From contig NC_079165.1 of assembly GCF_947568905.1 (NCBI RefSeq), forward strand, positions 105,772,001 through 105,836,000: a DNA stretch of 64,000 nucleotides, read 5' to 3'. The first letter of the stretch is position 1, and every line of letters begins with the position of its first letter. Shown piece after piece: positions 9,147 to 36,537 of this stretch. A program made the translations under genes and the position numbers. The notes beneath the pieces were generated by a model, which saw only the letters and a list, made by a program, of their open reading frames with translations, made no database searches and was not told where the DNA came from. This stretch comes from Ostrea edulis. Its lineage: Eukaryota.

Positions 9147-10499
9147 TAACCAAAGATTAAATCTATAGCTGTTAAATCCTGGATGTACAGTTTGAATTTT
9201 CCCGAGAGATTAAAGTTATTTTTTCATAATGATTCGGTGTGCAAATAATAATGGAAAGCATTATTAATTGAGGTTATTTATTGGAAATGCTATTGATTTC
9301 GTTCCAAGTTTAAAAAAAAATCGAACAATTGATTATAAAATGTCCAAGCAAATACCACAATCATAATTCATAATGATACATAGGTACTGATTATTTCGGT
9401 GTTTTCAAATTAATCCGGATTAATATCATTCTTAAATCGTTAGTTAATTATTTACTTAGTGGTGTCGATGAAAAACTAGGTCAGTAGAGGGAGAGCTTAG
9501 ATATATTTTCAAATAAAATGGACAGTATTGAATATTGTAATCTTAATTGTGTCTGTCAGTGAAGCTTTCTGTTGAATCGATAGATGATTTAAAAATACTC
9601 TAATCATACAGATACCGTTATGTCTCCTACTGTCATCTATAGCTTATACCAGTATTAAAAAAAACTCCAATAAAAATGATAAAAAGAAATCTATGACCTT
9701 AAAAAAATTGATTAAAAGATTAAAATTGTATACCTGACCCTATAACTTCAATTTGACCAAAAACACACGCGAAAGACATGCAGCTCTTATCATTTTTCAT
9801 TATTTCATACTCCTAAAGAATTGTTAGACATAAAAATTATTCCATTAAGATATAGATAAACTTACTGTGGGGAAAGTTAATCCATTTTCAAGAATAAGTT
9901 GTTAGTGTTTACAACTCGTTAAAACCCCCTCGTCTGAGAGTATTATTTACAGTAACTAAGTAAAGGTCCGGCCGGGGTACATGTGTAGACTTCGTCAACC
10001 AGCGTTGATACTGCGCACACCGGGTAAAAGGCAATGTCGTTTAATCGACAGCTGTATATTTACTCAGGATTTCGATAAATACTTTAGCTTTTCTGTACAC
10101 ATTGTATATTTGCCCTCTGCATCGTTTTCTGCGAAGGTTACGGCACTCGTTAGATACACTTCCTATTTATCTATACTCAAAAGATTTATAAATATTTCGC
10201 TTTTAAGGTAATTGAACTAAATTAGGGGCAATATTCCAGCTTGACTAGTCAATACGCCCCATGTTGACTCCTTATTCCTTGCCATATATGCACCTGACTT
10301 GGCATACATAGGTGTATACACAAACCTGGTGTGTAATAAATGTCCGCTTTAATATCAAATGTTGCATGATATAAGTATTTGGGGGATTTTTAAACAACAA
10401 AAATATTTATTGATTAGCAACAAAGAATTGGAAGCACAAATGTAATGTATTAAACTGGGTATTGTCATCATCAGATATTTTGACAGAGGCTTCAGGAAT

Positions 10500-11290
10500 C
10501 AACTGTAGAACACTGAAAACCTGCGAAGTTATGTGTCTAAAATCATGAAACTTTGAGAGCCAGTGGACACGCTATGACGGAATTTGTGGCCAGAGGAGTT
10601 TGAAATACACGATGTAGGCCAGAGTAGTGTACTTGTTTGCATGTGTTAGTTTTAATCAATGATGATGGTATAGATATTAGAAGACATTACCTTGCGCTGG
10701 ACATCAGCCTCCCATCTCACATCTATGGCTCAATGCAGCAAAAGATTGACACTTTAAACACCGAATCTGTAAAAGCTGGCCTGAAGAGGAATTCAAAGAA
10801 GGCAAAGGTTTTGGACGAATTTGGAGGAAAAGAAGCACATCACTTCTAAAGTAAAACAACGTTTGAACAAGTTTAGATTATCACTAAAGATATATGTCAG
10901 CTAAGCTTCTGGTTTGATACATGGAACAAAAACGTTGTAAACAAATGAATAGGAAGAAAGCAAACACCGAGGATTAAAAGGGTATTGCCTCGGAAGGGAC
11001 GTCAGGCGGCTTACATAAGATGACAGACAAAATGGGGTTAAAGAGAGTGGATTCACTACACACAACAATTTAAGAATCGAAAATACTAGTAGCATGCAGG
11101 CATCTCAAAACTCAACAAGGTGTGGAAACCAGGGAGACAGAAAGGCACACGGAGAAGAATATTAAATCAGGGATGAAACACCAAGGAACCAGCTAGAGAC
11201 GATGGCTGAAAACAAGACTGGTTGAAGGGCCCTTGAAGAAGACTCGTTTATATGTTGCAAAACAAGAAGAGGATTAAGAAAGTAAGTAAA
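10500..11290 (+). pseudogene. Decayed RTE-type LINE 3' portion
   Basis: Translation SMQQKIDTLNTESVKAGLKRNSKKAKV resembles the RTE RT region after the FADD motif; ends gaggattaagaaagtaagtaa, a typical RTE (TAAG)n tail. Confidence 0.65.
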
Positions 11291-12349
11291 TACGGGTCCC
11301 ACTCTGACATACCGACGACGACAGGGACGTTTGAGGAATTGTTTAACTTCCATTACTCAAAAGGGGCAAACTCAGTATCAACGTCTACGTCAACTGCTTG
11401 TTTAGCAATAAGTTGAAATGTTCCGCCCATCTGGCGAGTATCTAATCGAATAGTGTTGTCAACAGCCACGTAACGGTATAGATCCACTCGCATGAAAGTG
11501 GTTTAGAATATTTGACCCCTAGAAGTATCTGCCAACAGCATCTTGTAGTCTCTATATGCATTCCATGTCGTTTTATTTGAATAGAAGTTTTATTATTTGA
11601 TATTTGTAATCCTGAAAGTGTCCTACAAATAGGAAAATGAATGTCTCGCAGAAACGCCAAGTTTTGGTACTGAGTGATCGCATTCCTTATTAAGAATTGA
11701 CCTTCTTTCCTCTCAACGCTTCGTCTCCGCCATTTCATTTGTTGCAGAGGAAAATACGCATCTGCAAAGGGAACAAGGCTGGACTCCTTGTATTTGCTGT
11801 TATGCTTTTTCAGTCCATCATTTCTTCTCTATTTCTGGGCCACTTTCAATCATTTCCTTGGTATGTTTTCTATTGGTAATGTAATTTTAGTTTCGCTGTT
11901 GGATGTGGTTTCCTCAAATCAGGCACTATTTATTTACGAATCCACTAACTTGGTTTCTCCATAAAATCTGCATCTTGGTTCTCATCAAAGGGATATTTTC
12001 CAAATTCATGCATGATTGGAGCTTGTTGGTCATTTTTGCTCCATCGTTTTGCTATACCGTAAAGCTCTGTCGTTTAGCCTCGTAGTTTGTAGTTGATCAT
12101 TGTTGCTGTAGGAAATTAAAGCTGTATACTTCTAAAAAGCAAATAGTTTGACAGCCAACGATTTTTCACGGAATATATATTGCATTTAATCCAGTACCTG
12201 GATTGCGAGGATTGATGTTGTAGATTTTAACCGTATGGAATGTTTAATGTTGGTGATGGAAAGCTTATGAGACACACAGTGAGACAGCAAGAGTTCATCG
12301 CTTAAGAGAAACACCGTGGACCGTCATCCTTGGCTGACGAAGATGGGCA

Positions 12350-15300
12350 CCAAGATACAAAGCCTTCATAGACAGACACCACGATACAAAGCCTTCATAG
12401 TCACCACAATACAAAACCTTCATAGACACCACAATACAAAACCTTCATAGACACCACAATACAAAGCCTTCATAGACAACACGATACAAAACCTTCATAG
12501 ACAGACACCACAATACAAAACCTTCATAGACACCACAATACAAAATCTTCATAGACACCACAATACAAAACCTTCATAGACACCACAATACAAGCCTTCA
12601 TAGTCACCACAATACAAAGCCTTCATAGACACCACAATACAAAGTCTTCATAGACAGACACCACAATACAAAGCCTTTATAGACATACACCACAATACAA
12701 AGCCTTCATAGACAGACACCACAATACAAAACCTCCATAGACAGACAACACGACACAAAACCTTCATAGACACCACAATACAAATCCTTCATAGACACCA
12801 CAATACAAAACCTTCATAGACAGACACCACAATACAAAACCTTCATAGACAGACAACACAATACAAAACCTTCATAGACACCACAATACAAAACCTTCAT
12901 AGACACCACATTACAAAACCTTCATAGACAGACACCACAATACAAAACCTTCATAGACACCACAATACAAATCCTTCATAGACACCACAATACAAAACCT
13001 TCATAGACACCACAATACAAAACCTTCATAGACAGACACCACAATACAAAACCTTCATAGACAGACAACACGACACAAAACCTTCATAGACACCACAATA
13101 CAAATCCTTCATAGACACCACAATACAAAACCTTCATAGACAGACACCACAATACAAAACCTTCATAGACACCACGATACAAATCCTTCATAGACACCAC
13201 GATACAAAACCTTCATAGACAGACACCACAATACAAAGCCTTCATAGACACCACAATACAAAACCTTCATAGACAGACACCACAATACAAAACCTTCATA
13301 GACACCACAATACAAAACCTTCATAGACAACACAATACAAAACCTTCATAGACACCACGATACAAAACCTTCATAGACAGACACCACAATACAAAGCCTT
13401 CATAGACAGACAACACGACACAAAACCTTCATAGACACCACAATACAAATCCTTCATAGACACCACAATACAAAACCTTCATAGACAGACACCACAATAC
13501 AAAACCTTCATAGACACCACGATACAAATCCTTCATAGACACCACGATACAAAACCTTCATAGACAGACACCACAATACAAAGCCTTCATAGACACCACA
13601 ATACAAAACCTTCATAGACAGACACCACAATACAAAACCTTCATAGACACCACAATACAAAACCTTCATAGACAACACAATACAAAACCTTCATAGACAC
13701 CACGATACAAAACCTTCATAGACAGACACCACAATACAAAGCCTTCATAGACACCACAATACAAAACCTTCATAGACACCACAATACAAAACCTTCATAG
13801 ACACCACAATACAAATCCTTCATACACAGACAACACGATACAAAACCTTCATAGACACCACAATACAAAACCTTCATAGACAGACAACACGATACAAAAC
13901 CTTCATAGACACCACAATACAAAACCTTCATAGTCACCACAATACAAAATCTTCATAGACACCACAATACAAAGCCTTCATAGACAGACAACACGATACA
14001 AAACCTTCATAGACACCACAATACAAAGCCTTCATAGTCTCCACAATACAAGCCTTCATAGACACCACAATACAAAGCCTTCATAGACACCACAATACAA
14101 AGTCTTCATAGACAGACACCACAATACAAAGCCTTTATAGACATACACCACAATACAAAGCCTTCATAGACAGACACCACAATACAAAACCTCCATAGAC
14201 AGACAACACGACACAAAACCTTCATAGACACCACAATACAAATCCTTCATAGACACCACAATACAAAACCTTCATAGACACCACAATACAAAACCTTCAT
14301 AGACACCACAATACAAAACCTTCATAGACAGACACCACAATACAAAACCTTCATAGACAGACAACACGACACAAAACCTTCATAGACAGACACCACAATA
14401 CAAAGCCTTCATAGACAGACACCACAATACAAAATCTTCATAGACAACACGATACAAAACCTTCATAGACAGACACCACAATACAAAGCCTTCATAGACA
14501 CCACAATACAAAATCTTCATAGACAGACACCACAATACAAAACCTTCATAGACAACACGATACAAAATCTTCATAGACAGACACCACAATACAAAACCTT
14601 CATAGACAGACAACACGATACAAAACCTTCATAGACACCACAATACAAAACCTTCATAGACAGACAACACAATACAAAACCTTCATATGCAGACACCACA
14701 ATACAAAGCCTTCATAGACAGACACCACAATACAAAACCTTCATATACAGACACCACAATACAAAACCTTCATAGACAGACAACACAATGCAAAGCCTTC
14801 ATAGTCAGACACCACAATACAAAGCCTTCATAGACACCACAATACAAAGCCTTCATAGACAGACAACACAATACAAAGCCTTCATAGTCAGACACCACAA
14901 TACAAAGCCTTCATAGACACCACAATACAAAGCCTTCATAGACAGACAACACGATACAAAACCTTCATAGGCAGACACCACAATACAAATCCTTCATAGA
15001 CAGACACCACAAAACAAAACCTTCATAGACACCACAATACAAAGCCTTCATAGACACCACAATACAAAGCCTTCATAGACAGACAACACGATACAAAACC
15101 TTCATAGGCAGACACCACAATACAAATCCTTCATAGACAGACACCACAATACAAAACCTTCATAGACACCACAATACAAATTCTTCATAGACAGACAACA
15201 CAATACAAATCCTTCATACACAGACAACACGATACAAAACCTTCATAGACACCACAATACAAAACCTTCATAGACAGACACCACAATACAAAACCTTCAT

Positions 15301-16290
15301 AGACACCACAATACAAAACCTTCATAGACAGACACCACAATACAAAACCTTCATAGACACCACAATACAAAGCCTTCATAGACAGACACCACAATACAAA
15401 GCCTTCATAGACAGACACCACAATACAAAATCTTCATAGACAACACGATACAAAACCTTCATAGACAGACACCACAATACAAAGCCTTCATAGACACCAC
15501 AATACAAAATCTTCATAGACAGACACCACAATACAAAACCTTCATAGACAACACGATACAAAATCTTCATAGACAGACACCACAATACAAAACCTTCATA
15601 GACAGACAACACGATACAAAACCTTCATAGACACCACAATACAAAACCTTCATAGACAGACACCACAATACAAAACCTTCATATACAGACACCACAATAC
15701 AAAACCTTCATATACAGACAACACGATACAAAACTTTCATAGACACCACAATACAAAACCTTCATAGACACCACAATACAAAACCTTCATAGACGGACAC
15801 CACAATACAAATCCTTCATACACAGACACCACAATACAAAACCTTCATAGGCAGACACCACAATACAAAGCCTTCATAGACAGACACCACAATACAAAAC
15901 CTTCATAGACACCACAATACAACACCTTCATAGACAGACACCACAATACAAATCCTTCATAGACAGACACCACAATACAAAACCTCCATAGACACCACAA
16001 TACAAAACCTTCATAGACACCACAATAAAAAACCTTCATAGACACCACGATACAAATCCTACATAGACAGACACCACAATACAAATCCTTCATAGACAGA
16101 CACCACAATACAAATCCTTCATAGACAGACACCACAATACAAAACCTTCATAGACACCACAATACAAATCCTTCATAGACAGACACCACAATACAAATCC
16201 TTCATAGACACCACAATACAAATCCTTCATAGACAGACACCACGATACAAAGCCTTCACAGACAGACAAATCGATACTAAACCTTCATAA
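12350..16290. repeat. ~3.9-kb satellite array of 25/29-bp units
   Basis: Unit acaccacaatacaaaaccttcatag with optional extra acag; about 140-150 units; higher-order block duplications present. Confidence 0.97.
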
Positions 16291-18126: not shown

Positions 18127-21100
18127 ATGGCGGACACAGCACCTACTCTGACGGTTGGAGGCGACAGGACTACTGGCCAGTCTGTTAGGACACAAAATGG
18201 TTTGTTTTGCTTTTACAGTATTCATTTAATTTCTATGCACGATGTTTTAACCATGTAAATACTGATATTATAAGAGAACAGTTTTTTTTATTGTTGTTTG
18301 GCTTGTTCACATGGGAAGCACATGGCTACCTCGAGAATGTTCCACAACGTGTGTAGACTGGCAGGATCAGACATCTAATCTTGAGTTTAAAAATAAACCC
18401 AATTTTCAGCTGTTTAATGTTTTGGATTCATTTTCATTACATAAAACCGTTTTCAATTTGCACTTATTTATTGATAAGTCTTCGAATTTCATTGTTTACG
18501 AAGGGGGGGGGGGGGGGTTAAATAAAAATTTCACTTAATAATAAATATGTAATTTATATTTATGTCTAGTGTTTACCAAATTTAAAAGGCTTTGACGATA
18601 ACCTAACAAACCTTTTGATTATTATTATTATTGGTTTTCTCTGTTCAATGAACTTGACAAAAATTTACATACAATGTCATAATTATGTATAATTTGAAAT
18701 CAAGATATGGTGAAAATTGTGTAATAATCAAACTTGAAGACCATCATGCCAATATTTGGACCTCGAGCTTTTACTGCAGTCTCACAGATTTCAAGTTTTG
18801 CTGAAAGTTGTTGCAAACACATGCCAGAATGGAATACATTGTTTTGTTTTTGTGGCATAAAATATGATATTGATGTATGATAAGAATTAATTTTTACTGC
18901 TTTGAAATACAGGATTTTTCCATTCATACGGAATATCGGAACCATCATTTTGTCTCCGATTCTGCCCTGGTTTTAATATTTAGTATGTTCAACGAGATCA
19001 CGTTTTCTGCATTAACTTGGGCAACTTTTCAGCAAACAAGCACATGTTACTTATGTACTAACAGATATAGTGAATTCGGGCACATTTTAGCACCGTTTTT
19101 TAAAGGGTTGGAAACAAACGAAGAAAAAAAAGTGCCGTTATATTAATATGAAAAATCTTAGTTAGCAAGAAAAGCAGTTCTGCTGAAACCCCGAAATCGT
19201 AAAAGGGGGGGGGGGTATTCTTCAGTTCATCTGTTGAACTCATTGATCTAACCTTGCATTTCCACTACCATTCACCACTACTATATCAAGTGACCAGCTA
19301 ATGAATCGATCTTTGTATGTACTAATAACAAACTTTGATGTATGTGATAATTCAACACAATCTCAGGATAAGGGGAGGCGGGGGCGGAAGTGTGTGGTGG
19401 TGGAGGGGGGGGGGGGGGGGGGGCTACATGTTGCTGCATGTATATGTACGTTTCTGAAGATCGATTTATAAATAATTTATTGTGATTAATTATATCATGT
19501 CATAGCGGTCGGTTGTTTTAATGACTCAAGAAAATCTCAAAGTAAATATCTAAGTGCATACGGTGTAGGAAATAGACTTTTTCTTTTGTTTTATTTGCTA
19601 CCAAACATCAGAAATTTAATCCAATAACTCATGTTTTAGTACAAGTACATTCACTTGCAACATTCTGAAAAATAATCTTTAAACCAGGCATATATTTTTA
19701 TATCAGAAATGAGTCGTCTTTAGCCATCACTAATTTGTATACAAGAGTTGCCCAAGTGACGCATAATTTTCGTAACTTCTTTTTCTGAAGAGTTCCAAAA
19801 TTTTCTAGTTCCGATATCCCGTATTGTTTATTCTTGAAAGAATTGAACATTGGAGAAATCCTATTAATTTTCCAAAAATGTCTAGAATTATTCCCAAATC
19901 CAAATTACATAGGGCAGCTTTTAACTTTGGTGTGAAAAACACTGATTGATAAGTTTGTAGAAACTAGGAGTGAAACGATACAGTATATTCTCGATTCGAT
20001 ACAATAGCATGTACCAAATTCTTTATAATGCTACGTTTTTTTTATGTTTCATTGTATTTATTGCTCTCTACAAATAAATTCTACATAATGTAAAAATGTT
20101 AAACATAAAGCAACACTCTTATCACTTGTCCTAAAGCCAAAATGTTGCCATACCCAAGATTTATACATGGGGGGGGGGGGGGGGGGGGGGGGGGCATTTT
20201 TCAACTCGACTGCGTCCATTTTGATACAGCAAACTTTACTCGTATGTTGATTGGGCAACTTTCAATTCCATTGGCTAATCAGAAACCGTGTTATCAAAAG
20301 CAATGTGTGCTATGATTTTAGAACCACATCGAACCGAAACAGACCCCGAGTAAATTGAACATCAAATTGAGACCACTACATCGCGATTTGGCCGCATCGC
20401 GATGCATCGTTTCACCCCTAGTAGAAACATTGCCCTATATTTGAAAATTTTCGTTAGTTTTTTCCTTACTGCAGTGTACGAATGATAATATGAAATCTGA
20501 TTGTCATCTTTATTAAACTTGCATATGTAATGGTCCAAACTGTATTTTGCATACAAGGACTGTCTGTCAAACTTGCAGTGTGTGTTTTCTCTCCTCTGTT
20601 TTGTTTCTGTTTTCTCTACTTTTAATTATTCTATCTTTATCTTGATCCTGGTCACATTATTTTTATTTTATTATTTATTATTATTTGCAATTTTTTGTCA
20701 CAGAATCAGATTTTTGGTTGCATAATGCATACAAGGGCATTTTATTCTGAAACCAGGAGAATTAGTAGGTCTTCTATCTTATAGAAATCACATTTGAATT
20801 GTGAAATATTACTTAATAAAGAAATTATCTTGTTTCAGTCCTAGCAGCAAGTTCCATTGCCAACATAGTGAAGAGCAGTCTTGGACCAGTTGGTCTGGAT
20901 AAAATGTTGGTTGATGATATTGGAGTAAGTATTCGTACATTATTTAAATATTTGTTTAGTATTTAAGTAAAATATTTCTTCTTTTGTGGCTGAGGACTTG
21001 ATGAGGAGCAGTATTTCTTTAAATATGTTCTACTTTCTTGGACATCAAACAGCCAAACTTAGTATGAAGTATTGATAATGGTAATTATACCTAAAGTGTG

Positions 21101-22078
21101 AAATTCGTGGCCTTTGGGTGAGGGGTTATGGTGCTAGGGTAGGACTTGATGACTTGTATAGTGAATAATTTCTTCTTGATTTCCGACTTGCCAGACGGAG
21201 AACACAGTTAATGAGTTATTTGTAATGAATGCGCATTATGTAAGTTGGATGCATATGCAAGTGGCACACACTTCACCCTGGGCACTGTAAATTTCTTTAG
21301 GCATTTATGATGGTCAGAGTCAGTTATTTTAATAAATTTTGAAAGTAACAGACAATGATTTTGAGACGTGTCGGAAAATTGTGAGGGAATGATAACATAT
21401 TATAGTCATTGATTTTATTTTTGAGTATTTAGTTCTTTTGTTTAAACTGCTTGTAGATACATGTGCTAGTTGTGGGTATAAGCAATTAAAAATAAAAACT
21501 TATGATGGCTAGAGCTGGTTTTATTGGCTTTTTCAAAGAAATGAAACAAAATATCATAAATGAAAACAAATTAATTGCTTAATTTTTTTATCCAGCACAA
21601 GTTAATTCCAACTTCAATATAGATCCTTACCCAGAAAGCACAATATTGATGTTTAGATACAAGCCATGATGCAATATATAGTGTAAGGAATACAATTTTA
21701 TATTATTTACAGGATGTCACCATAACAAATGATGGGGCAACAATTCTGAAGCTGTTGGAAGTGGAACATCCAGCAGCAAAGGTCCTGGTGGAACTGGCTG
21801 ATTTGCAGGACCAGGAAGTGGGAGACGGCACCACTTCTGTCGTAAGAACTGTCTCAGTATTTTCTTGGTCAAAATCACATGGCCTCTCACCTTTGTTGGC
21901 GCGGGATTGAATCCCGCTCACGCCGTTAAGTGAGAAAGTTTCCCAGTTTACTTGCGGAAGGTCGGTGGTCTCTTCTCTGGTACATTGTATCTGGGTTCTA
22001 TCTTCCACCAATAAAAACTGGGCGCCACCAGATAACTGAAAAATTGTTGAGTGTGGTAGAAAACAGCAAAAGAAACAA

Positions 22079-22149
<71 letters not shown>

Positions 22150-25100
22150 TAGCGACATGCCTATTATCAATGTATTAATTACAATTATTTAAATGCTGTA
22201 TAATTGTTGTACATGATGTGACTTGTGTTTATTTTAAATATGATTTATCATTCATGTTTATAGGTAATAATTGCTGCTGAGCTTCTAAAGAATGCAGATG
22301 AGCTGGTAAAATGTAGGATCCACCCCACATCCATCATCAGTGGATACAGACTAGCATGCAAGTAAGGAGTCTTTGTTAAAAGTCAGAATTAATTATTACA
22401 TGTAAGGTTATGTAACTGAAGAATCCAAACCTCTCCCCCACCCACCCCCCAAGAGAGAGGGAAAGAAAAAAAAGAAGAATATAGTGTATATAATTACGCG
22501 GTCCAACAGATTTTGTGAACCAAGAACAAATGACATCTCACCTGAATTGTACTGAAATTTTGTAAATGATAAATTTGGGTTCAAGAAATATATTATTTTA
22601 TCAAATTACATTCTACACTGCAATTATTTGGCTGTGTTGTACTTTATTTTAGAAATAAATTTGATCTTTGAAAATACATTCGGGTATGAACTGGGACCGG
22701 TACGGATATAAATTGGAACATTTCATGCTGGCATACTTCATGAAGCAGGTTAATTTATACCCTCATGTATTTTTAAAATGGAATTTCTTACATTTACATT
22801 CTGCTTTCATTTCCGTCAGAATTACTAATCGTTGAAATAGACACATTATATTCATCAAGATTCATATTTGCATTGTTTGCAACTGCAACACATTCATGAG
22901 AAAATGGCTAACCGTACAATTTGGTAAAGATATCAAAGGCAAAAAGATTGGAGATGTTAATATTAAGGTTTCAAATTGTTTTCTTTTGAACTCCAGTGGA
23001 AAGTGTGGGGCTTATTTTTTGTGGCAGTGGTTTGAAAGGATTGGATTCAATGTTACATGACATTGCTTGCAAATTGATTTAAATATTTTTGTATTTGAAA
23101 GGTTTTGATATGGCCCATAAACTCTTAAAAATGTTATCATGCAAAATATTAACACCCATTTATTTGCTGTGCACACAATATAGTGTGTAACAGTTATACG
23201 CATGGGATAAAGAAATACAACAGGGAAGTGCCAGAGTATTTGTCAATTACAGACAACTGCTGTGTATTTTTCCTGTTACATGTTCTGTACATAATTTGAA
23301 ACCATGTTCTAATGGTGGGAATTCTGAAAGAAAAAGATGCATATTTCCATTCATTTGCTATGCCAACTTTGTGCTGGTGATGTTTATTTGTATGGAGATG
23401 AAGAAAAAATTTGTACCAGGGCACTTGTGGTTTTGTAACTATATTTTAAGTCAAAGAGCCATAACGCCACTTGAAGTATCTTCTTTGGAATGTAACTCAA
23501 CAAATCTGTTTGCCTGGAACTTATGAGATTGATCACTGTTTGTTATCTTTACTTTTCATTGATATACAAGTACACACTAAATGTCAGCTCAATATCAGAA
23601 TTATTTGGCATGGCATAATCATTCCATTAAATAGGGATGTATGTGTATAGTCAGTTTGTTGTGGTAAGGAGTTATGAATCCCCATAGTAGCCCCATCCTG
23701 GCTCTGGTGGCTATTGTTTAATAAATTTGACTTAGTACGATAAACTGTTACTCTCAGATAAGTTTTGTCCTTTCTGGTCCACTGATTATGGAGGATTTGC
23801 AATGACCCATCTCGAATAGAAGTTTTCTTAATTTTCTTCCCTTTGAAGTGGGTACAATCCTACAATTGAAGAAACAAACTTGAATCCTTTCTATTCAAAG
23901 ATACTGAACTTGTTTGCAAAGTTGCTTTTCTTGAAAATATGGTCCAATGGCTTTTGAAAGATATTATGACAAACTCAAGATGGAATGACTCACTTAGGCT
24001 ATTGGATCAAGTTAAATGAAAACAGCCCACAGGACCATAAAACTTCGACTAGCTCAGCCTATATTAATTTAAGTCTCACAATGTGGTGAAAAAAGTGAGA
24101 CTGAGATCAGCTCGTCCAAGTGCTGTGGGGCCAGAACTCCTTCATCTATTTCCCCACTGTTACACTGAACTGTACATCTGAATTCAATCATTACATCAGT
24201 CGGAGGAAATTAGTGGGCATGAAACAAACTGTATACAGGGATAGTTTGCACCATGTTATTTGTTGCCATAGGCCCTGAGAAAAGACTGAATGGCATTTTA
24301 GATTTGATCATTGCTATTTTGTGCTACATAAGATCAATGAATAAATTGTAGTAGCCCAGTATGAAATTTGTCCAGTTGCGATGCATACAAGTTGTCAGCG
24401 AGAATAAAAAAGGGGAGACAATTTCCTTGTATACAGCATTCATTGGTGGGAGTAAAGCAGAAATACAGATAAACATGTCCAATTTCATTCCCATTTATTT
24501 GCTGTGCACACAATATAGTGTGTAACAGTTATACGCATGGGATATAGAAATACAACAGGGAAGTGCCAGAGTATTTGTCAATTACAGACAACTGCTGTGT
24601 ATTTTTCCTGTTACATGTTCTGTACATAATTTGAAATCATGTTCGAATGTTGGGAATTCCTTTTAGTTGAATAGAAAGATGTTTCTCCTACTCCAGCTCT
24701 TTGCTGATGATTTATAGCAAGTACTGTGACATAAAGTATACCTGTTCATAAGTACTTCGACTCCGAGAGATCAAAGTATGTGAGTCACATGTAATTCATT
24801 CATTTTAAGGAGGGGAAAGGGCCGAAATTCGGACCCAAAATGGGCCTTAAAAAATCACTGAATCATTCATCATAATTACAGTGTAATTTATTTTCAGAGA
24901 AGCCTGTAAATACATCCAAGAACACTTGACGATCAATGTTGACGAGCTCGGAAAAGAATGCATCGTAAATGCTGCCAAAACTAGCATGTCCAGTAAAATT
25001 ATAGGATCGTATCCTTGTTAAGAAGACAATGATACATGCATGTGTGTTATTCCCTACATATACAAAATCATCAGGCACTATGTTGTGCTTATGATGTGTT

Positions 25101-28100
25101 GTGTCTTCATAACTAGCTAGCAAATAACAGGTAGAATATTTCTAATGTGAATGGCCCATAACATTTAAAAGCTTACTTTGGAGTGACATCAGGAAATTTA
25201 CTCGCTTAAAATTTTTCAGTTGTTGGTTATTTACAACTTTGGGAAGATTCTCATTGATTATCAGATTGTCGTTTGATATAACTATATTTCCTGTGTATTT
25301 TCTCTTTATTTGAATTTTACCTGTTAATTTTGGTATTTGGCTGATTTATGCAATCATGTGTTTCTTGTTGCAGATGAAAGCAATGTCAATTTCAACAGAA
25401 ATATAAGAGAAAAGATACAGTGAATTTAAATGTATTACATGTACTGTATATGTATGTTTATCATAATTGTCAATTTGGATTTGTATTCTGTTTGGTCAGA
25501 TCGTAATCCTACTCATTGGTTGGATTACCTACGTTTCCTGCATCTGATTTTCTTTTTGTCACAGTTCTTGTTTTCTTTCTTTTTGTCACAGTTCTTGTAT
25601 TGAATGAAATTTTCCTTAGTTGTTCCCAGTGAATCTGAGTTCTTTTCCAATATGGTTGTTGATGCAGCCAATGCAATCAAAACTGCAGATGGGAAAGGAG
25701 GCTATAGATATCCAATCAAAGCTGTTAATGTACTGAAGGCTCATGGGAAAAGTTCTAAAGAAAGCTTGGTGATTCACGGTTATGCTCTCAACTGCACAGT
25801 AGCTTCTCAAGGTAAGATTTTTTTTATATGTTGGTAGTAATATTCGTGTGCAAGATTTTGTTAAAAGTTCTTTGAACTACTTGTTAAAGTCAGCTCTGAA
25901 AAAAGTTACTGTAAACCAGCTCTTTATATACTTGCAAGATTTGCGTTCCTGGACCTGTCATTAATTTTCAATAATGTCTGCAGCAACAAAGTAATAAAAA
26001 TTTAACAAAACTGACCATTTGGAATGTAGATACATGTATAATGCTCAGTTCAAAATATACCAAAGTTTCAAGATGTGTGATCATGGTGATATTGTTTCCC
26101 AAATAAAATGAAATAAATACTGACGCTGCAAGACTAGTGTTCCATCTGACACTTACGAATAAAAGATGATGCATATAATAGCTGGTTACAGTAAATTGTA
26201 GAGATTTGTAAAGATTTTGATAGCATTCTAAATTTTATATTGATTCTCAATTAAAGCAATGGTAAAGAAAATTGTTGGGGCCAAGATAGCCTGTTTAGAC
26301 TTCAGTTTACAAAAGGCAAAGATGAAGATGGGTGTTCAAGTCCTGATTGAAAATCCAGATCAGTTAGATGCAGTCCGGCAAAGGTGAGAGCTCATTAACC
26401 GGTCAGCTGGAATGAATTTTAGGTAAAAATATGTTTGGCTTCAACAGAAAATATGGATAAAAATTTGTATTGTTTCAGGGAGTATGATATTACAAAAGAA
26501 AGAATAGAAAAGATTTTGGCTGCTGGAGCAAATGTTATTCTGACCACTGGTGGAATTGACGACTTGTGCTTAAAATACTTTGTGGAAGCAGGGGCCATGG
26601 CTGTAAGACGGTGTAAGAAAGTGGATCTCAAGAGGATTGCCAAAGCAACAGGAGGTGGGTCATTTTGTGACGTTTTAATGTACTTCATATACAATATTTT
26701 AAAAACATGGTCGGTGTGTGTCTAAGTTTACGTAGTCAAGATTTTACAATGCTAAACGACTTGTATTATCAAAACAAAGGGGAAAAAAACCTTCCTGTCA
26801 CGCTTTACTTTAAAAAAAAATTGTCAGAGAAATTCTCAGAATAGTTGAATATCTGATATCATACTAAACCTCTGATATCAAAGTTTTCACTTCCACACTT
26901 TTGACAGGTCAACTAGTGATGACCTTGGCTAACCTTGAGGGAGAGGAAACGTTTGAGGCCTCCATGTTAGGAAATGCAGAAGAAGTTGTCCAAGATCGTG
27001 TTTGTGATGATGAACTCATTCTTGTGAAGGGGTAAATACAGAAAATAACAAATTTCTCTACAATACAATGATTTCAAATTAAAACGGAAACATTTAGATA
27101 CTTTCAGGGTGATTCTCATCAGAAAATGTGTATTTTAGTATACCTGTTAGTGTATAGTTTGTTGTTCTTTTTTATTACAAAAAAATGTGGTAGAATTTCT
27201 GATGAGTATATTAAATGGTGATTTCGTGTTGAGTTGAGGGCTCAGGTGAGCTTCTTTGATCAAGTATAATCTGCCCTCTATATGTATGTCTGTCTGTCTG
27301 AACGTTTTCACATTTCAATCTTCTTAAAAACCACAAGTCCAAATTTCAACCAAAATTTCAACAGAGCATTTGTGTATTAAAGGCAGGGTTGTCACTGACG
27401 CAAGAATATGCGTCCTAGACACAGAAAATTCATTTGGGACACAAGTTTGTCTGATAAGGCGAGTGACGGTCACAGACTCTGAGTAAAAATCATAATTTTT
27501 ATTAGAAGCCCTGATATTGTGTATCAATTAAAACTCGTAGTAGGAAAAAATCTAGGTAAAATATTACGCTCTAGTGAACCGAAATAATACCACTGAGTTC
27601 ACAGTGTCCCAATCCGACTTGTTTGTTTAGCGTCAGTCAATTAGGTGCAAATTAGAATATAATATTCAAAAGATAATTAGATAACATGCCAAATGGAGAA
27701 TGTTTTGCCACTGACAGTTATTTATTCTTATTACTTTATTTGTTTGTTTCACAAATCGGGATCTATATTTAAATATAAATGTTTGTATTCCGGTAGCCAT
27801 TTTTATTGGAATCGAAAGTAGCGTATAGTTTGTAAACTTGGTACTAGGTTTTTTAGATCGTCAGCAAACAAAACTAGTACGCATCTATTTTATCAAAATA
27901 ATAATTTGACTAAAATGCTGTTCAATATTGAATAGGGTTGTTGTGATGATAGGAGATTCGGGGAATAATTCTTTTGGCGATGTCCGAGGCCAAGTCGTGA
28001 ATGATTAAAAATAAATCTTCAAAATTGATATATTTTGTACTGCTTCCATTTTAATTGTCTAATATAAAAGGACTCATTAGATATTCATGGGACTCATCAG

Positions 28101-30047
28101 ATTTTCATGGGACTCATCAGATTTTCATGGGACTTGATCGAATTTTCGTGGGACTCGAGCTGCTTATAAACCACAAGTCCGGGACTCATCTTCAAGAATT
28201 TCTAGTGACAACCCAGATTAAAGGGATTCAAATTTGTTCAAATAATGGATCCCAGGGGGAGATATTTAAGAAACAGCATGGTTATTAAAGGCTCTTTCAA
28301 GAGCTACTGAATCAGAATAGCTGAAACTTGTATTTAACTTTACATAAATTATGAAGATTTAAATTCAAACCATTAGCCTCCAATCCAGGGCAGGGGAATA
28401 ACAAGGATTCAGTTTTTGCATTGGAATAGATAGGAATCTTCATCAAAGCAATGTTCTTCTTGGAACCACTATAATAATGCAAGCAACCTCATGTACAGCC
28501 ACAAATGGGTTTAAAGTTTTTCATAGGATGCTTAAATTTGTTCCCTTTAGAACCATACTGGTACAATTAATCAAATTAGTATGCAAGCTTCCTCATGTAG
28601 AGTAGTTTAAATTAACCCCAGGGGCCATAATTGGGATTAGATAATTCATGTCGGAAAATGCAACTACTTGGATGAGTGGAGTAGCCCATTGGCCTTTTTT
28701 TTTTAAAAGTATGAATACAATTTTCTTTTCAGTCCCAAGGCACGGACAGCAGCCTCTATTATTCTGAGAGGTGCCAATGACTTTATGTGTGATGAGATGG
28801 AGCGCTCTGTCCATGATGCTCTGTGTGTGGTAAAACGAGTCCTGGAATCTAAATCTGTTGTCCCCGGCGGTGGAGCAGTGGAGGCAGCATTGTCTATATA
28901 TCTGGAAAACTTCGCTACATCATTGGTATAACTGCTTTATACACTGTACGGTTGTCTAGCTTAAAGCATCATGTTTCTGTTTTATTGTTTTATCATCTCT
29001 GAATAATATATGAGACCGAATTAATATCAATTTTGTCCCTGCATCTGTGTAGGAAGTGTAGTGCTGACCAAAAGTAGGTCAAGTTGATGGTAGTTGGGAA
29101 TTATATGGGAATACACTTGCACACATTGAAATTTTGTATGGATTATATTGTAAAGAGCTTTAGGCTGCATTCATCAAACAATGTCAGTCAGTTCATCTTT
29201 GGAGCTTATCCATATTAAAGTCATTCAGTTGCATTTAAGTGCATAGTAAAATGCATACCAAGACATTCAATGGGTTTGGAGCTGGAGCTACATGTATTCG
29301 TAAAGCCAAAGTCCAATATACACTTCCTGATGAACATTTCAGCTCACCTGAATTTTTTAATTAAATATACTAGCAACATGCTTAGAATTATCTGAAAATC
29401 TGATGTGATGTGTCATTTAGAATCCATTGCTCTTTTACAGGGATCGAGGGAACAGCTAGCCATTGCTGAGTTTGCGCGGTCTCTGCTAGTGATCCCTAAA
29501 CAGCTAGGAATTAATGCTGCTCAAGATTCTACAGACCTAGTGGCCAAGTTAAGAGCTTACCACAACATGTCTCAGACCAAACAGGAGCACAGGGACCTCA
29601 GATGGTAAAGCTTTTATAGAATTAATAAGAAAGGCATTACTTACAGCTTCTTATCAATAACATGTGAATAGATCCGATGTTTTCAACAACAACAAAAGTG
29701 AAATGTGGTAAATCTTTTTATGATAATAATAAGAATTCAAACTTTTCTTTAAGCTAGTGATCTTTTTAGTGCCGTATATAATGTAGGTATGTTTGTTTGA
29801 GGAGTATCACTAGTTAATGTACTGTATGTTTCTCGGTAGGGTTGGATTGGACTTGTATCAGGGTACAGTGAGAGACAACAAGAAGGCTGGGGTACTGGAA
29901 CCTGCGATGTCAAAAATCAAATCCCTCAAGTTTGCCACTGAGGCTGCTATCACTATTCTTCGAATAGATGACATGATAAAACTTGTGGATCAAAGTAGAG
30001 GAGGCGGCAAAACTTATCAGGATGCTCTGAATGCCGGGGAGTTATAG
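18127..30047 (+). CDS. TCP1: T-complex protein 1 subunit alpha (CCT1), 12 exons, 556 aa
   Basis: Exons 18127-18199, 20839-20924, 21713-21841, 22264-22361, 24898-25008, 25630-25811, 26257-26383, 26479-26654, 26908-27031, 28733-28925, 29441-29604, 29840-30047, all GT-AG and in frame (1671 nt). Chaperonin motifs [32 protein letters not shown]; alpha-type N-terminus [20 protein letters not shown] at ~30107 and ~30167. Confidence 0.98.
19965..20420. mobile_element. hAT-type MITE with BED zinc-finger remnant (TCP1 intron 1)
   Basis: TIR taggagtgaaacgat / atcgtttcaccccta; 8-bp TSD gtagaaac on both sides; minus-strand [10 protein letters not shown]...ALC resembles a BED finger start. Confidence 0.85.
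21880..22145 (+). mobile_element. tRNA-derived SINE with (TC)n tail (TCP1 intron 3)
   Basis: B-box-like gggattgaatcccg, central ggtcggtggt...ccaccaataaaaactg core typical of bivalve SINEs, followed by about 30 TC units. Confidence 0.6.
23153..23283 (+). ncRNA. SNORA20: H/ACA box snoRNA, SNORA20-like, copy 1 (TCP1 intron 4)
   Basis: Hairpin 1 cccatttatttgctg...cagttatacgcatggg, H box AAAGAA, hairpin 2 aacagggaa...tttcctgtt, ACA at 23278-23280. The hairpin-1 ends match human SNORA20 as recalled. Confidence 0.8.
24488..24618 (+). ncRNA. SNORA20: H/ACA box snoRNA, SNORA20-like, copy 2 (TCP1 intron 4)
   Basis: Nearly identical to 23153-23283; H box ATAGAA; ACA at 24613-24615. Confidence 0.8.
25009..25629 (+). 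other. U12-type (minor spliceosome) GT-AG intron of TCP1 (intron 5)
   Basis: 5' splice site GTATCCTT; branch-point-like TTTTCCTTAG about 11 nt before the 3' AG (ttgttcccag) with no long polypyrimidine tract. Confidence 0.85.
27230..28710. mobile_element. Helentron-associated non-autonomous element (HINE), degraded and interrupted (TCP1 intron 9)
   Basis: 5' gctcaggtgagcttctttgatc...tgtctgtctgtc...ttttcacatttc; 3' gagtggagtagcccattggcctttt; typical oyster HINE architecture as recalled. Confidence 0.55.
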
Positions 30048-33688: not shown

Positions 33689-36537
33689 ATGACTAGTGCC
33701 AGGTAGTATACAAAGAATGAGTGTTAAATTTTTATTTTACACTTATAAAGATATACAGTAGCTAGAATTTCCTCTGTTATTCTGTAGGTGTTTAAAAATT
33801 AGGCGCCGTTTAAGATAAATGATTAAACCAAACTGTCTTGAATAATCCAGTTGTTCTCACTAATCTGGTTTTTATAACTAATCGTTAGTTGTATTATTTT
33901 TACTTCAGCGTTGTTCCATATACACCCAAAAAGAAATCGGATGCATTACCATCCATAGATGCTACAAATGATATACAAGACCCATTGGATTATTCATTTT
34001 GTCGACTGAATAAAGTAGAGGGTAAGATGGGCCACTTCACCAATAATATTATAATGGAATTATATCTACATGAAATATTTTATATGAATGAAATATATAT
34101 TTGCCACTTCACAGATGCACTGGAAGAGGAGCCCAGGTCATCTCCAAAAAAGGATCAGTCCAATAATTCTGGGAAGTCTCAAAGTCGCTGTCTCCGATTA
34201 AACAATAACAGTCTTCAGTCGATTGAACGACTTAATGAAGTCATAAATGCCAAGTTTGATAATCCCAGGAACATTGCTTGGATTGACTTATCATTCAATG
34301 AATTGACAACTGTTGATCCAGTAAGGAATACTATTTAATCTAAGTGATGTAGATAACCAACTTTAACACAAAGTTATGTGTTGTTGTCATTGATATCCAT
34401 AATTTTATCTGTCTTTACAGTGTCAGATAATATTTATGAATTTTTTTTTACTTCATCGAGGGAAGTTTTTGAAGAGTGTAACTGTTGTAAAAAAAAAAAA
34501 TGCTGAACATCTCTGAAATTACTTCATTGGAATTTGACCCAAACATGAAGAGGCAATTTTGATTGTGAGAAATCATTGCTCCGTGCCAAATGTTCCATGT
34601 CAGATTGACCTTACAAACACTATATGTTCATAAACATGATAGTCAACAAGTAACTAATTTGCAAAATGCTTTTGATCTTTGAGTGATCTTCATCTGATTA
34701 TTATGACTGTAGTAGGTATTTTTTTTCTGCAGGTTTTATTGGAGTTTCCTGAACTTCAAATATTATACCTCCATGGGAATCAGATAGGAGATGTTAAAGA
34801 AGTTGCCAAACTCTCTGGTCTGACAAAGTTAAGAAAAGTGACACTCCATGGAAACCCGCTCGAGAAGACTAAGGTATGAAAAGATTGTGAAAAGAGTTAT
34901 TTGAAAATGTCATAGTGGAATTGATCGATTTTGTGATAGCCAGATTTAATGGTTTATAAAAATTTGGATGGCTACAATCGCCAAACAAGATTGTATAAAT
35001 ACAATTCCGGGTTGGTTGGATGGGGGTTAACTGTTAAGGACAAACTTTGCACTAAGATCAGAATTGGTGAAATACCCTATTCATTTTGATATCATTAGAA
35101 ATAATTGCTTTCATACTGATATTGATTAGGAAAAGCTGAGTTATAATTTTGCCTTAAGTAATGTATGAAACTTCTCCATCGTAAAAAAAGAAAGAAAAAA
35201 AAAAGAAACTGTATCTTGGTATTCTTGTATTGACTTTGTCTTATTCCATTTTAACAGCATCAATTAAAAACAGTATTAAAAAGTCTCCTCACCATTCACC
35301 AATTTAAAAAGTGCTATCATTCTTTTAAATGTGTTAAGGTTTAATGAGAGAAACAATTAACTGACTAACTGATTTACTATTAAACTTTAAAACATACTTT
35401 ATATTTGAATCATACCTTGTTTCCACACATATTTATACACAGACATAGTTTAGAAAAAATTCTCAGAGAAGAAAGAGTTTTCTCTTTTTATCATGTTTAT
35501 AATGAGGTAGGAAAGACCCACATTTTCTCCTTTATCTACCCCACTTTACTAAAAAAACAAACTGATCTCATTCCAATTAAAAATAAATCAATGAAAACTT
35601 GTACTAACTTGTTACCATCGTTAATAACAAATTAATTCTAAATATGTTTAATATTTTCTAAAGTAGGATTTTCTAATACTAGAGTGTGAATTAATAGCAG
35701 ACATCCAGGAAATTGTTTCATGTCTAAACAGGCTAGTTGTATTTGGCGCTCTAAACATATTCACCAGCACCCAGCAGTTGTTAGATAACTGTTTCTAATT
35801 TAGATCATAAATGTAAAATGAAATGTTCATAATGAAATTAGGGCTTCATTTCAAGGCTCTACCATGAGATAAATAGGAAAGCAAGTAAGTTTTGGAATGT
35901 TCATGTTAGTTACCTTGGCATTTCCTTTTAATCAAGGTCTCATTGTAAGTGAACTTAAAACAAAACACAAACTACCAAAACAAACAACCATGCAATTATT
36001 AATTTACAAGGAAATTACCCAGCCAGTGACCTTGATCTTTTACATATACCTTCTTGAAAACCAGGACATAATGAATTGAATAGGGACCCAGATCTTTATA
36101 CATGCTGTATAAGGTTGTACACAAGAAATTTCAAAATTTTCCTTCAAGCAATTATGACCTTGCTCCTGTAACCTTGGAAAACTTGTAAGAACAAAAAAAG
36201 TTCAGAAATGTTTTAACTTTTTCTGGTGTCATGAGTGTGAATTGTCAGTAGACTCTAATTTTTTTTACCTATATTTTACCTATCTATCTATATGTAGTAC
36301 TCATAGATGAAAATGGTGGCCTAGAAAACAGGAACAAATAATATTTCACTTTAGGCCCTAGGTAATGTATTTTTTGAATTATGACAGGGTTACAAGTTCC
36401 AAGTGATGGCTATGGTTCCCCAGCTTCAGACAGTGGACTTCAGTCGTGTAACAAAGTGTGATAGAAAAACATCAGAGGTCTGGAATAACATGAACAATGC
36501 CCCGAAGAAAAAGAAGGAAAAACTAGAGGACGATTAA
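33689..36537 (+). CDS. LRRC51: Leucine-rich repeat-containing protein 51, 5 exons, 207 aa
   Basis: Exons 33689-33702, 33909-34021, 34115-34320, 34733-34873, 36388-36537 (624 nt, in frame). Motifs PLDYSF, LRLNNNSL, IAWIDLSFNELTTVDP, ILYLHGNQI, VTLHGNPLE, DFSRVTKCDR match LRRC51. Exon 1 is the least certain. Confidence 0.9.

What the first reader, a model, noticed from the sequence alone, without database searches (positions are those of the whole stretch)
23153..24618. Twin SNORA20-like H/ACA snoRNAs in one TCP1 intron: a host-gene link shared with vertebrates
Seen: a ~165-bp block is duplicated almost exactly (23155-23320, 24490-24660); each copy folds as hairpin-H box-hairpin-ACA, and the one substitution in the hinge falls at an N of ANANNA. 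The pocket strand TATACGC is complementary to conserved 18S GCGUAUA. Established from memory: human SNORA20 is TCP1-intronic, has the same hairpin-1 ends and guides 18S pseudouridine near U651. Inference: a snoRNA-host pairing dating to the bilaterian ancestor, plus a recent duplication. Two snoRNAs in one intron is unusual in animals and raises a processing question. Hairpin 2 differs from the human one and may have another target.
Basis: partly seen in the sequence, partly recalled or inferred. Interest (0 to 1): 0.7.

Follow-up and report, generated by a model that had tools for sequence, protein, structure and literature searches.

The report
Twin SNORA20-type snoRNAs in oyster TCP1
One intron of an oyster's TCP1 chaperonin gene carries two almost identical small guide RNAs (box H/ACA snoRNAs of the vertebrate SNORA20 type) built to convert one conserved uridine of 18S ribosomal RNA into pseudouridine, and the same RNA-in-TCP1 arrangement is also found in a scallop, an annelid, a frog and a fish.

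Summary
A 170-nt block (23155-23324 and 24490-24659, 4 mismatches) occurs twice. DNA contigs from three independent studies confirm both copies, and the genome holds no others. Each copy is a full-length but sub-threshold Rfam SNORA20 match (39.6 and 33.3 bits, cut-off 60). Each has a hairpin-H-hairpin-ACA fold supported by compensatory changes across oysters. The 5' pocket pairs 7+3 with the oyster's own 18S around U609, the geometry published for chicken ACA20. Both copies lie in TCP1 intron 4 (22362-24897), confirmed by a spliced transcript contig.

The interpretation needs correcting in two places:
- **Twin state.** It is old in oysters. C. virginica keeps two diverged types, U and D. In this genome D has decayed to a relic (23343-23446) and U was re-copied. 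Saccostrea shows the mirror image.
- **Intron position.** The intron is not conserved, only the host gene. Copies sit in intron 4 (oysters), 4+5 (scallop), 7/8/11 (Owenia), 7+9 (frog) and 9 (chicken). Vertebrate intron 4 holds the clan-mate SNORA29.

No copy was found in TCP1 of Solemya, Patella or Ptychodera. Expression and the pseudouridine itself are untested. This is a new member of a known kind. The scan had already noted multi-snoRNA introns elsewhere in this genome.

The parts
23152..23283 (+). Upstream H/ACA snoRNA copy (U-type). Lower stem 23155-23159/23202-23206; 5' pocket strand 23160-23165; 3' pocket strand 23195-23201; H box 23209-23214; ACA 23278-23280.
   Evidence: Rfam SNORA20, 33.3 bits, model 1-128. 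Oyster model R1, 126.6 bits. Fold z = -4.0. A at 23154 breaks the sixth pair of the lower stem.
24487..24618 (+). Downstream H/ACA snoRNA copy (U-type). 5' pocket strand 24495-24500; 3' pocket strand 24530-24536; H box 24544-24549; ACA 24613-24615. It ends 279 nt before the 3' splice site.
   Evidence: Rfam SNORA20, 39.6 bits, E 1.9e-4. R1, 130 bits. Fold z = -4.8.
23155..23324 (+). Duplicated block, first copy. It starts at the first C of the lower stem and runs 41 nt past the snoRNA's 3' end.
   Evidence: One of the 4 mismatches lies inside the RNA and 3 lie in the 41-nt 3' flank.
24490..24659 (+). Duplicated block, second copy.
   Evidence: The junctions are confirmed by DNA contigs of three studies.
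23343..23446 (+). Decayed third copy (D-type relic). The lower stem is damaged, the 3' pocket strand is mutated (TTTATTTGT instead of TTATACGC) and there is no ACA box.
   Evidence: R1 hit, 36 bits, E 3.4e-5. The alignment shows D-type signatures shared with C. virginica 'down' and Saccostrea copies.
22362..24897 (+). TCP1 intron 4 (GT..AG, 2536 nt), which holds both snoRNAs and the relic.
   Evidence: A spliced contig of a related species joins 22361 to 24898. The flanking exons match Pfam Cpn60_TCP1 positions 67-99 and 100-134, with no gap.
22264..22361 (+). TCP1 exon 4.
24898..25008 (+). TCP1 exon 5.
18127..30044 (+). TCP1 (CCT-alpha) coding region, 12 exons. Exon boundaries are conserved with frog, fish and other molluscs.
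   Evidence: tblastn exon maps. The best solved-structure matches are T-complex protein 1 subunit alpha.

Best explanation
These are two paralogous box H/ACA snoRNA genes of the SNORA20 family (Rfam clan CL00030), lying in the sense strand of intron 4 of the oyster's TCP1/CCT-alpha gene.

Inferred mechanism, from established H/ACA biology:
- The RNAs are transcribed as part of the TCP1 pre-mRNA and bound by the dyskerin/Nop10/Nhp2/Gar1 proteins.
- They are released from the excised intron by trimming up to the snoRNP boundaries. A cut in the 1.2-kb spacer is needed to free both.
- The pocket of the 5' hairpin pairs with 18S rRNA on both sides of U609: 7 bp with GCGUAUA through the 3' strand UAUACGC and 3 bp with AAA through UUU. 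This places U609 14 nt upstream of the H box for isomerisation to pseudouridine.

Evolutionary reading:
- The ancestral oyster intron 4 carried two diverged copies, U then D, as C. virginica still does.
- In this lineage D decayed to a relic, and a 170-nt block containing U was copied (or converted) 1335 nt downstream.
- In Saccostrea the opposite happened.
- The family has stayed in TCP1 since before the protostome-deuterostome split but has moved between introns.
For: Family and structure:
- Both copies give full-length SNORA20 matches. The 5' hairpin is nearly identical to the vertebrate consensus.
- An oyster-only model in turn finds the frog intron-9 SNORA20 at E 1.2e-6 and the frog SNORA29s at about 1e-3.
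- On 8 oyster sequences, 93% of cells are paired, against 31-45% when partners are slid. Eight pairs carry compensatory changes. The pocket strands are invariant.

Target:
- The best hit over the oyster's own 18S, 5.8S and 28S is U609, with 7+3 Watson-Crick pairs. Only 4-6 of 200 shuffled pockets do as well.
- This matches chicken ACA20: 18S-612, '3+7 nt (5')', host TCP1 (PMC2653536).

Constraint:
- Between oyster genera, intron 4 aligns only at the snoRNAs.

Host and intron:
- Searches identify the gene as TCP1 alpha and fix the intron.

Turnover:
- The tree groups (Cvir_up,(WIN_up,WIN_down)) with 99/98 support, against Cvir_down plus all Saccostrea copies.
- A relic of the opposite type is present in each lineage.

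Deep link:
- H/ACA candidates lie in TCP1 introns of Pecten (introns 4 and 5) and Owenia (introns 7, 8 and 11). They fold correctly and pair 6+6 or 5+6 with the same 18S segment.
- Frog copies lie in introns 7 and 9, and a fish copy in intron 7.
Against: - No small-RNA or pseudouridine data could be obtained. The one RNA-like run shows only low, even intron coverage.
- The Rfam scores are below the curated cut-off of 60 bits. The frog copies in TCP1 introns 7 and 9, which carry the same guide, also fall below it at 44.4 and 39.7 bits.
- The upstream copy has lost one pair of its lower stem.
- No copy was found in TCP1 of Solemya, Patella or Ptychodera, so the deep link requires several losses or moves.
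- The Pecten and Owenia candidates were only weakly found by the independent oyster model (E 0.01-0.3). Their high R2 scores are by construction, because they were in that model's training set.
- The Pecten pocket fits the 18S site only in a register shifted by one nucleotide, with one unpaired guide base on each side.
Confidence: 0.85

Rival explanations
1. Only one copy is functional. The other, most likely the upstream one with the weakened lower stem, is a young pseudogene on its way to decay like the relic next to it.
For: The upstream copy has A instead of U at 23154, which breaks the sixth pair of the lower stem and lowers its scores (33.3 against 39.6 bits; 126.6 against 130). Relics in this genome and in Saccostrea show that copies do decay in this intron.
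Against: Five lower-stem pairs remain, and both pockets, the H boxes and the ACA boxes are intact. Only 1 of the 4 differences in the 170-nt block lies in the 129 nt of RNA and 3 lie in the 41-nt flank. A hand calculation gives a chance of about 0.05. Three oyster genera each keep exactly two intact copies.
Confidence: 0.2
2. The near-identity comes from gene conversion between two long-standing copies (concerted evolution), not from a new duplication.
For: The identity block has sharp boundaries, and the flanks cannot be aligned to each other. Saccostrea also has a downstream copy of the same type as its neighbour (86-88% identical). No target-site duplication or poly-A tail marks a retrocopy.
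Against: C. virginica shows no third copy or relic downstream of D. Spacing differs between genera: 1335, about 770 and about 730 nt. Neither point is decisive.
Confidence: 0.35
3. The TCP1 link in lophotrochozoans and vertebrates arose independently: a mobile snoRNA was captured twice by the same broadly expressed gene.
For: snoRNA-host pairings are reported to be unstable ('constrained drift', PMC3511168; limited conservation of host pairing even within vertebrates, PMC13736004). The intron differs between lineages, and three sampled invertebrate TCP1 genes lack the snoRNA.
Against: Features not dictated by the target are shared: the UCCCA/UGGGA lower stem, the hinge and the pocket geometry. 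Hitting the same gene twice among thousands of candidate hosts is unlikely. Intron 4 is occupied by a clan member in oysters, scallop, frog and human (PMC4824147).
Confidence: 0.2
4. The second copy is an assembly duplication.
For: None beyond the near-identity itself.
Against: Contigs from three independent DNA studies cross all four junctions, and bins inside the repeat reach about double depth in two of those runs.
Confidence: 0.01

Closest known systems
SNORA20 / ACA20 (Rfam RF00401); chicken GGgACA10
   Same: Box H/ACA architecture. The 5' hairpin ends and both pocket strands are nearly identical. The predicted target is the same (chicken 18S-612, 3+7 nt in the 5' hairpin; the human numbering 18S-651 is from memory). 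The host gene, TCP1, is the same.
   Different: Scores are 20-27 bits below the Rfam cut-off. The 3' hairpin is unrelated in sequence. It lies in intron 4, not intron 7 or 9. Two copies share one intron.
SNORA29 / ACA29 (Rfam RF00429, same clan CL00030)
   Same: It occupies TCP1 intron 4 in frog and human (PMC4824147), the intron used in oysters. It shares the CCCAUUU/AUGGGA lower stem and the hinge.
   Different: Its pocket strands differ, and it shows no complementarity to the 18S site. The oyster RNAs match SNORA20, not SNORA29, as the best clan member.
Intronic snoRNA gene clusters of rice and Drosophila
   Same: Several snoRNAs sit in one intron of a host gene, which implies processing that frees more than one RNA per intron (cited in PMC2780460).
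   Different: Here the cluster holds two copies of one H/ACA family plus a relic, in a protein-coding chaperonin gene of a mollusc. The processing enzymes are unknown.
cis-duplication of vertebrate snoRNAs within a host gene
   Same: Paralogues arise inside the same host gene and then diverge or decay (PMC2653536).
   Different: In vertebrates the copies usually end up in different introns. In oysters they stay in one intron and replace each other.

Membership tests
Box H/ACA snoRNA (class) | Hairpin-hinge-hairpin-tail fold | tested here: met
   MFE folds have z = -4.0 and -4.8. The consensus over 8 oyster sequences has 38 pairs, 93% of cells paired and 8 pairs with compensatory change.
Box H/ACA snoRNA (class) | H box ANANNA in the hinge, and ACA 3 nt from the 3' end | tested here: met
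   AAAGAA and AUAGAA at 23209 and 24544; ACA at 23278 and 24613, followed by UGU. The true 3' end has not been measured.
Box H/ACA snoRNA (class) | Pocket complementary to a target on both sides of an unpaired U-N, 14-16 nt upstream of the box | tested here: met
   7+3 bp around 18S U609, with the H box starting 14 nt after the first pocket base. Only 4-6 of 200 shuffled pockets do as well.
Box H/ACA snoRNA (class) | Stable ~130-nt RNA bound by dyskerin-complex proteins | not testable with these tools
SNORA20 (RF00401) | Score at or above the Rfam gathering cut-off (60 bits) | tested here: not met
   39.6 and 33.3 bits. The frog SNORA20-like copies in TCP1 introns 7 and 9 also fail, at 44.4 and 39.7 bits, so the cut-off is tuned to amniotes.
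SNORA20 (RF00401) | 5' hairpin guide for the 18S site of ACA20 | tested here: met
   The pocket strands are identical to those of frog and fish copies. The 3+7 geometry is the one published for chicken ACA20.
SNORA20 (RF00401) | Hosted in a TCP1 intron, sense strand | tested here: met
   The intron number differs from vertebrates.
SNORA20 (RF00401) | 3' hairpin homologous to the vertebrate one | tested here: inconclusive
   The structure aligns to the model but almost no bases are shared. The frog 3' hairpins align poorly with the oyster ones.
SNORA29 (RF00429) | SNORA29 pocket sequence, with SNORA29 as the best clan match | tested here: not met
   Clan competition kept SNORA20 as the best match. 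The pocket strands differ from those of frog SNORA29.

The most novel reading that the evidence does not exclude
TCP1 has hosted a SNORA20/29-family H/ACA snoRNA since the protostome-deuterostome ancestor, probably first in intron 4. The association has survived through repeated cis-duplication and decay, which keeps at least two working copies. In oysters two opposite replacements (U for D, D for U) both restored a pair. In vertebrates the intron-4 copy lost the 18S guide and became SNORA29, while copies in introns 7/9 kept it. That would make this a rare, deeply stable snoRNA-host pairing, maintained by selection on dosage or on co-expression with the CCT chaperonin rather than by positional inertia.
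Probability: 0.35. Interest if true: 0.65.

Novelty: new member of a known kind. Interest (0 to 1): 0.45.

Why it matters
- **Annotation.** It gives molluscs a well-supported, unannotated rRNA pseudouridylation guide with a named target: 18S U609, the site of vertebrate ACA20.
- **Exception to 'constrained drift'.** Published surveys conclude that snoRNA-host pairings are unstable over deep time (PMC3511168, PMC13736004). Here one pairing spans oysters, a scallop, an annelid and vertebrates, while the intron used keeps changing. This is a concrete case in which host-gene fidelity can be separated from positional inheritance.
- **Copy-number selection.** The mirror-image replacement of one paralogue by the other in two oyster lineages is a small natural experiment on whether copy number is under selection.
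- **Processing.** It is a tractable case for asking how two H/ACA RNAs are freed from one animal intron.

Tried and rejected
- **Rfam at gathering score:** nothing on the whole window. Only the E-value mode showed the matches.
- **MS2-operator and SNORA75 hits**: rejected as chance. E is 1-6, and they overlap the better SNORA20 match or its 3' flank.
- **Rfam SSU family search on the own genome:** failed technically. It was replaced by a 22-nt pattern search.
- **Metagenome scan** with a strict two-part pattern of the 5' hairpin: 0 hits.
- **The large protein search with one exon**: returned mostly exon-sized fragments. Three look-ups of such fragments gave nothing or contigs under 1 kb.
- **A home-made guide finder for the 18S site**: too permissive on AT-rich introns (20 plus-strand against 10 minus-strand hits), and it missed the Owenia copies. 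It was used only to confirm coordinates.
- **Hairpin-2 target search:** the best candidate is 18S U453 (3+7 bp). It uses exactly the oyster-invariant GUGCCAG and GUG elements. However, 36 of 200 shuffled pockets score as well, and the same bases can pair within the hairpin. It is kept as a lead only.
- **A minus-strand hit in Patella intron 6**: lacks the guide and a convincing fold, so it was rejected.
- **Spliced TCP1 protein:** deliberately not joined. Exons were searched one by one by reference, and in alignment A2 they are separate rows.
Full report
**1. The observation**

The region 23000-24800 holds a direct repeat of 170 nt, at 23155-23324 and 24490-24659. The copies are 98% identical and 1335 nt apart. 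The flanks do not align with each other. BLAST of one copy against the whole 895-Mb genome finds these two places only. So does a covariance-model search (150 of about 110,000 rough candidates were scored, so this is a lower bound).

The duplication is not an assembly artefact:
- Logan contigs of three independent DNA studies end or start about 30 nt inside the repeat on all four sides, as k-mer graphs do at repeats: 22923-23184, 23319-23548, 23531-24519 and 24615-24831.
- One contig spans copy B entirely (24490-24831).
- Bins inside the repeat reach about twice the neighbouring depth in two runs (X7 62.7 against about 29; X1 30.6 against 13.5), though not in every bin or run.

**2. What the copies are**

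- **Rfam.** There is no match at gathering score. At E-value threshold both copies match SNORA20 (RF00401) over the whole model (1-128): 39.6 bits with E 1.9e-4 at 24487-24618, and 33.3 bits at 23152-23283. The 5' hairpin is nearly identical to the consensus.
- **Fold.** Both copies fold as hairpin-hinge-hairpin-tail, far better than shuffles.
- **Boxes.** The H box is AAAGAA in one copy and AUAGAA in the other. The only difference inside the RNA is at the second position, an N of ANANNA. ACA lies 3 nt from the predicted 3' end.
- **Weaker upstream copy.** It has A at 23154 where all other oyster copies have U. This breaks the sixth pair of the lower stem and explains its lower scores.

**3. 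Host gene and intron**

- **Identity.** Plus-strand exons match Pfam Cpn60_TCP1 in order. Their best solved-structure matches are T-complex protein 1 subunit alpha, by a wide margin over other subunits.
- **No hidden exon.** The exons at 22264-22361 and 24898-25008 cover profile positions 67-99 and 100-134, so no exon lies between the copies.
- **Splicing.** A spliced contig in an RNA-like run of a related species joins 21841>22264, 22361>24898 and 25008>25630, all GT..AG. Both snoRNAs therefore lie in one intron, 22362-24897.
- **Intron number.** tblastn with annotated TCP1 proteins shows 12 exons, with boundaries conserved between oysters, other molluscs, an annelid, a hemichordate, a frog and a fish. 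This is intron 4.
- **Method note.** Exons were searched separately by reference, and in alignment A2 they are separate rows.

**4. Target**

- **rDNA.** The oyster's own rDNA unit was located with a short pattern and annotated.
- **5' pocket.** A pocket-to-target scan over 18S, 5.8S and 28S puts 18S U609 first. It has 7 Watson-Crick pairs to the 3' pocket strand and 3 to the 5' strand. Only 4-6 of 200 shuffled pockets do as well.
- **Geometry.** The H box starts 14 nt after the first pocket base, within the canonical 14-16.
- **Published match.** The chicken snoRNA survey lists the ACA20 orthologue as 18S-612, '3+7 nt (5')', host TCP1 intron 9 (PMC2653536). That is the same geometry. The human number, 18S-651, is from my memory only.
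- **Hairpin 2.** No significant rRNA target was found. The best candidate (18S U453, 3+7) uses the oyster-invariant GUGCCAG and GUG elements, but it is matched by 36 of 200 shuffles.

**5. Relatives in other oysters**

A profile search gave annotated TCP1 proteins of many animals, and their genes were fetched with introns.

- **Twin copies elsewhere.** Crassostrea virginica has two SNORA20-like matches in intron 4 (L010 2991-3124 and 3718-3854). Saccostrea echinata has two on each of two contigs (L011 3923-4055 and 4691-4822). Scores are 41-45 bits.
- **Constraint.** Between genera the introns align only at the snoRNAs, the signature of constraint.
- **Covariation.** On the eight oyster sequences the consensus structure has 93% of cells paired, against 31-45% with slid partners. 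Eight pairs carry compensatory change. Both pocket strands of hairpin 1 are invariant.

**6. The twin state is old and the present pair is a replacement**

- **Two types.** A tree of the eight sequences groups C. virginica 'up' with both copies of the window (99/98 support). It groups C. virginica 'down' with all Saccostrea copies. I call these types U and D.
- **Relic in the window.** The oyster model also finds a decayed copy at 23343-23446 (36 bits), 60 nt after the upstream gene. It has D-type signatures, a ruined pocket and no ACA box.
- **Relic in Saccostrea.** A decayed copy with U-type signatures lies at L011 3738-3806, just upstream of the first D copy.
- **Simplest reading.** The ancestor had U then D. 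In the window's lineage D decayed and a 170-nt block with U was copied or converted downstream (2.4% divergence). In Saccostrea U decayed and D was copied (12-14% divergence).
- **Open points.** Each lineage ends with two intact genes. Whether that reflects selection on dosage is an inference. Duplication and gene conversion cannot be told apart here.

**7. Deeper relatives**

- **Frog.** Xenopus tropicalis TCP1 carries four clan CL00030 members: SNORA29 in introns 1 and 4 (97 bits each), and SNORA20-like RNAs with the same guide in introns 7 and 9. The latter score 39.7 and 44.4 bits, also below the Rfam cut-off.
- **Fish.** A cyprinid fish has a SNORA20-like copy in intron 7 and a SNORA29-like one in intron 3.
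- **Human.** SNORA29 is in TCP1 intron 4 (PMC4824147).
- **Scallop and annelid, weak independent hits.** The oyster-only model, with filters off, weakly picks up candidates in Pecten maximus (introns 4 and 5) and Owenia fusiformis (E 0.01-0.3).
- **Scallop and annelid, supporting features.** These candidates fold as H/ACA RNAs and share the UCCCA/UGGGA lower stem and hinge. Their pockets pair with the same 18S segment. Owenia pairs 5+6 with U609 (1 of 200 shuffles). Pecten pairs 6+6 in a register one nucleotide further on, with one unpaired guide base on each side (0-2 of 200).
- **Third Owenia copy.** A second model built on twelve 5' hairpins finds a third Owenia copy, so Owenia has copies in introns 7, 8 and 11. 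The high scores of the training sequences under that model are by construction and do not count as support.
- **Absences.** Nothing was found in TCP1 of Solemya velum, Patella vulgata or Ptychodera flava.
- **Conclusion.** The host gene is shared across protostomes and deuterostomes but the intron is not, and the distribution is patchy.

**8. How it likely works**

Shown by sequence:
- The architecture, the boxes and the guide-target fit.
- Constraint across oyster genera.
- The host intron.

Inferred from established H/ACA biology:
- The RNAs are co-transcribed with TCP1.
- H/ACA proteins assemble on the nascent intron.
- The RNAs are released by trimming after splicing.
- U609 is isomerised.

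Two RNAs in one intron need a cut in the spacer. The enzyme is unknown in animals. Intronic clusters are known in rice and Drosophila (PMC2780460). Earlier scan notes report other multi-snoRNA introns in this same genome (not checked by me).

**9. Limits**

- No small-RNA data or pseudouridine map was available.
- The single RNA-like run shows only low, even intron coverage in a related species.
- Look-ups of eukaryotic loci were capped at twelve, so arthropods, echinoderms and cnidarians were not sampled.

**10. Verdict**

This is a real, well-supported pair of SNORA20-type H/ACA snoRNA genes, a new member of a known kind. The interesting part is evolutionary: a host-gene link that appears to pre-date the protostome-deuterostome split, despite the published view that such links drift (PMC3511168, PMC13736004), and a paralogue turnover that twice restored a pair.

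Noticed in passing
window 13005-16289: A large minisatellite of about 121 copies of a 29-nt unit (85% matches), roughly 1.8 kb upstream of the TCP1 start. It produces many spurious repeat-derived ORFs on the minus strand.
   Followed up: partly
window 21888-22175 and 23472-23615: Short intronic stretches with enormous summed contig depth in all DNA runs (10^5-10^6 against about 15-30), i.e. fragments of very high-copy repeats. A pure (TC)31 microsatellite lies at 22083-22144.
   Followed up: partly
L014 (Xenopus tropicalis TCP1) 2741-2878, 5114-5248, 7548-7683, 8415-8545: Frog TCP1 carries four clan CL00030 snoRNAs: SNORA29 in introns 1 and 4, and SNORA20-like RNAs in introns 7 and 9. The two SNORA20-like copies score below the Rfam gathering cut-off.
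   Followed up: yes
L016 (Pecten maximus TCP1) 8898-8970, 10286-10358, 12108-12180, 13115-13187: Four sub-threshold SNORD47-like box C/D matches (31-35 bits, cut-off 50), all in the long intron between exons 10 and 11. They may form an intronic C/D snoRNA cluster.
   Followed up: no
L015 (Sinocyclocheilus TCP1) 5844-5909 and 8704-8769; exons 8-9 at 9928-10307 and 10490-10911: Identical SNORA20-like copies and repeated exons 8-9 suggest a local assembly duplication in this fish scaffold.
   Followed up: no
window 33889-34879: Plus-strand ORFs downstream of TCP1 have leucine-rich-repeat-like sequence (for example LHGNQIGDVKEVAKLSGLTKLRKVTLHGNPLE), so the next gene probably encodes an LRR protein.
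   Followed up: no
L011 and L012 (Saccostrea echinata): The TCP1 locus is present on two contigs that are 98% identical across intron 4. They are probably haplotigs or a very recent segmental duplication.
   Followed up: partly
window 24518-24778 (run X19): A low-depth contig of a related species (about 88% identical) starts 31 nt inside the repeat. That is what a k-mer graph would do if that species also had two copies. No contig of that run covers 23040-23471.
   Followed up: no
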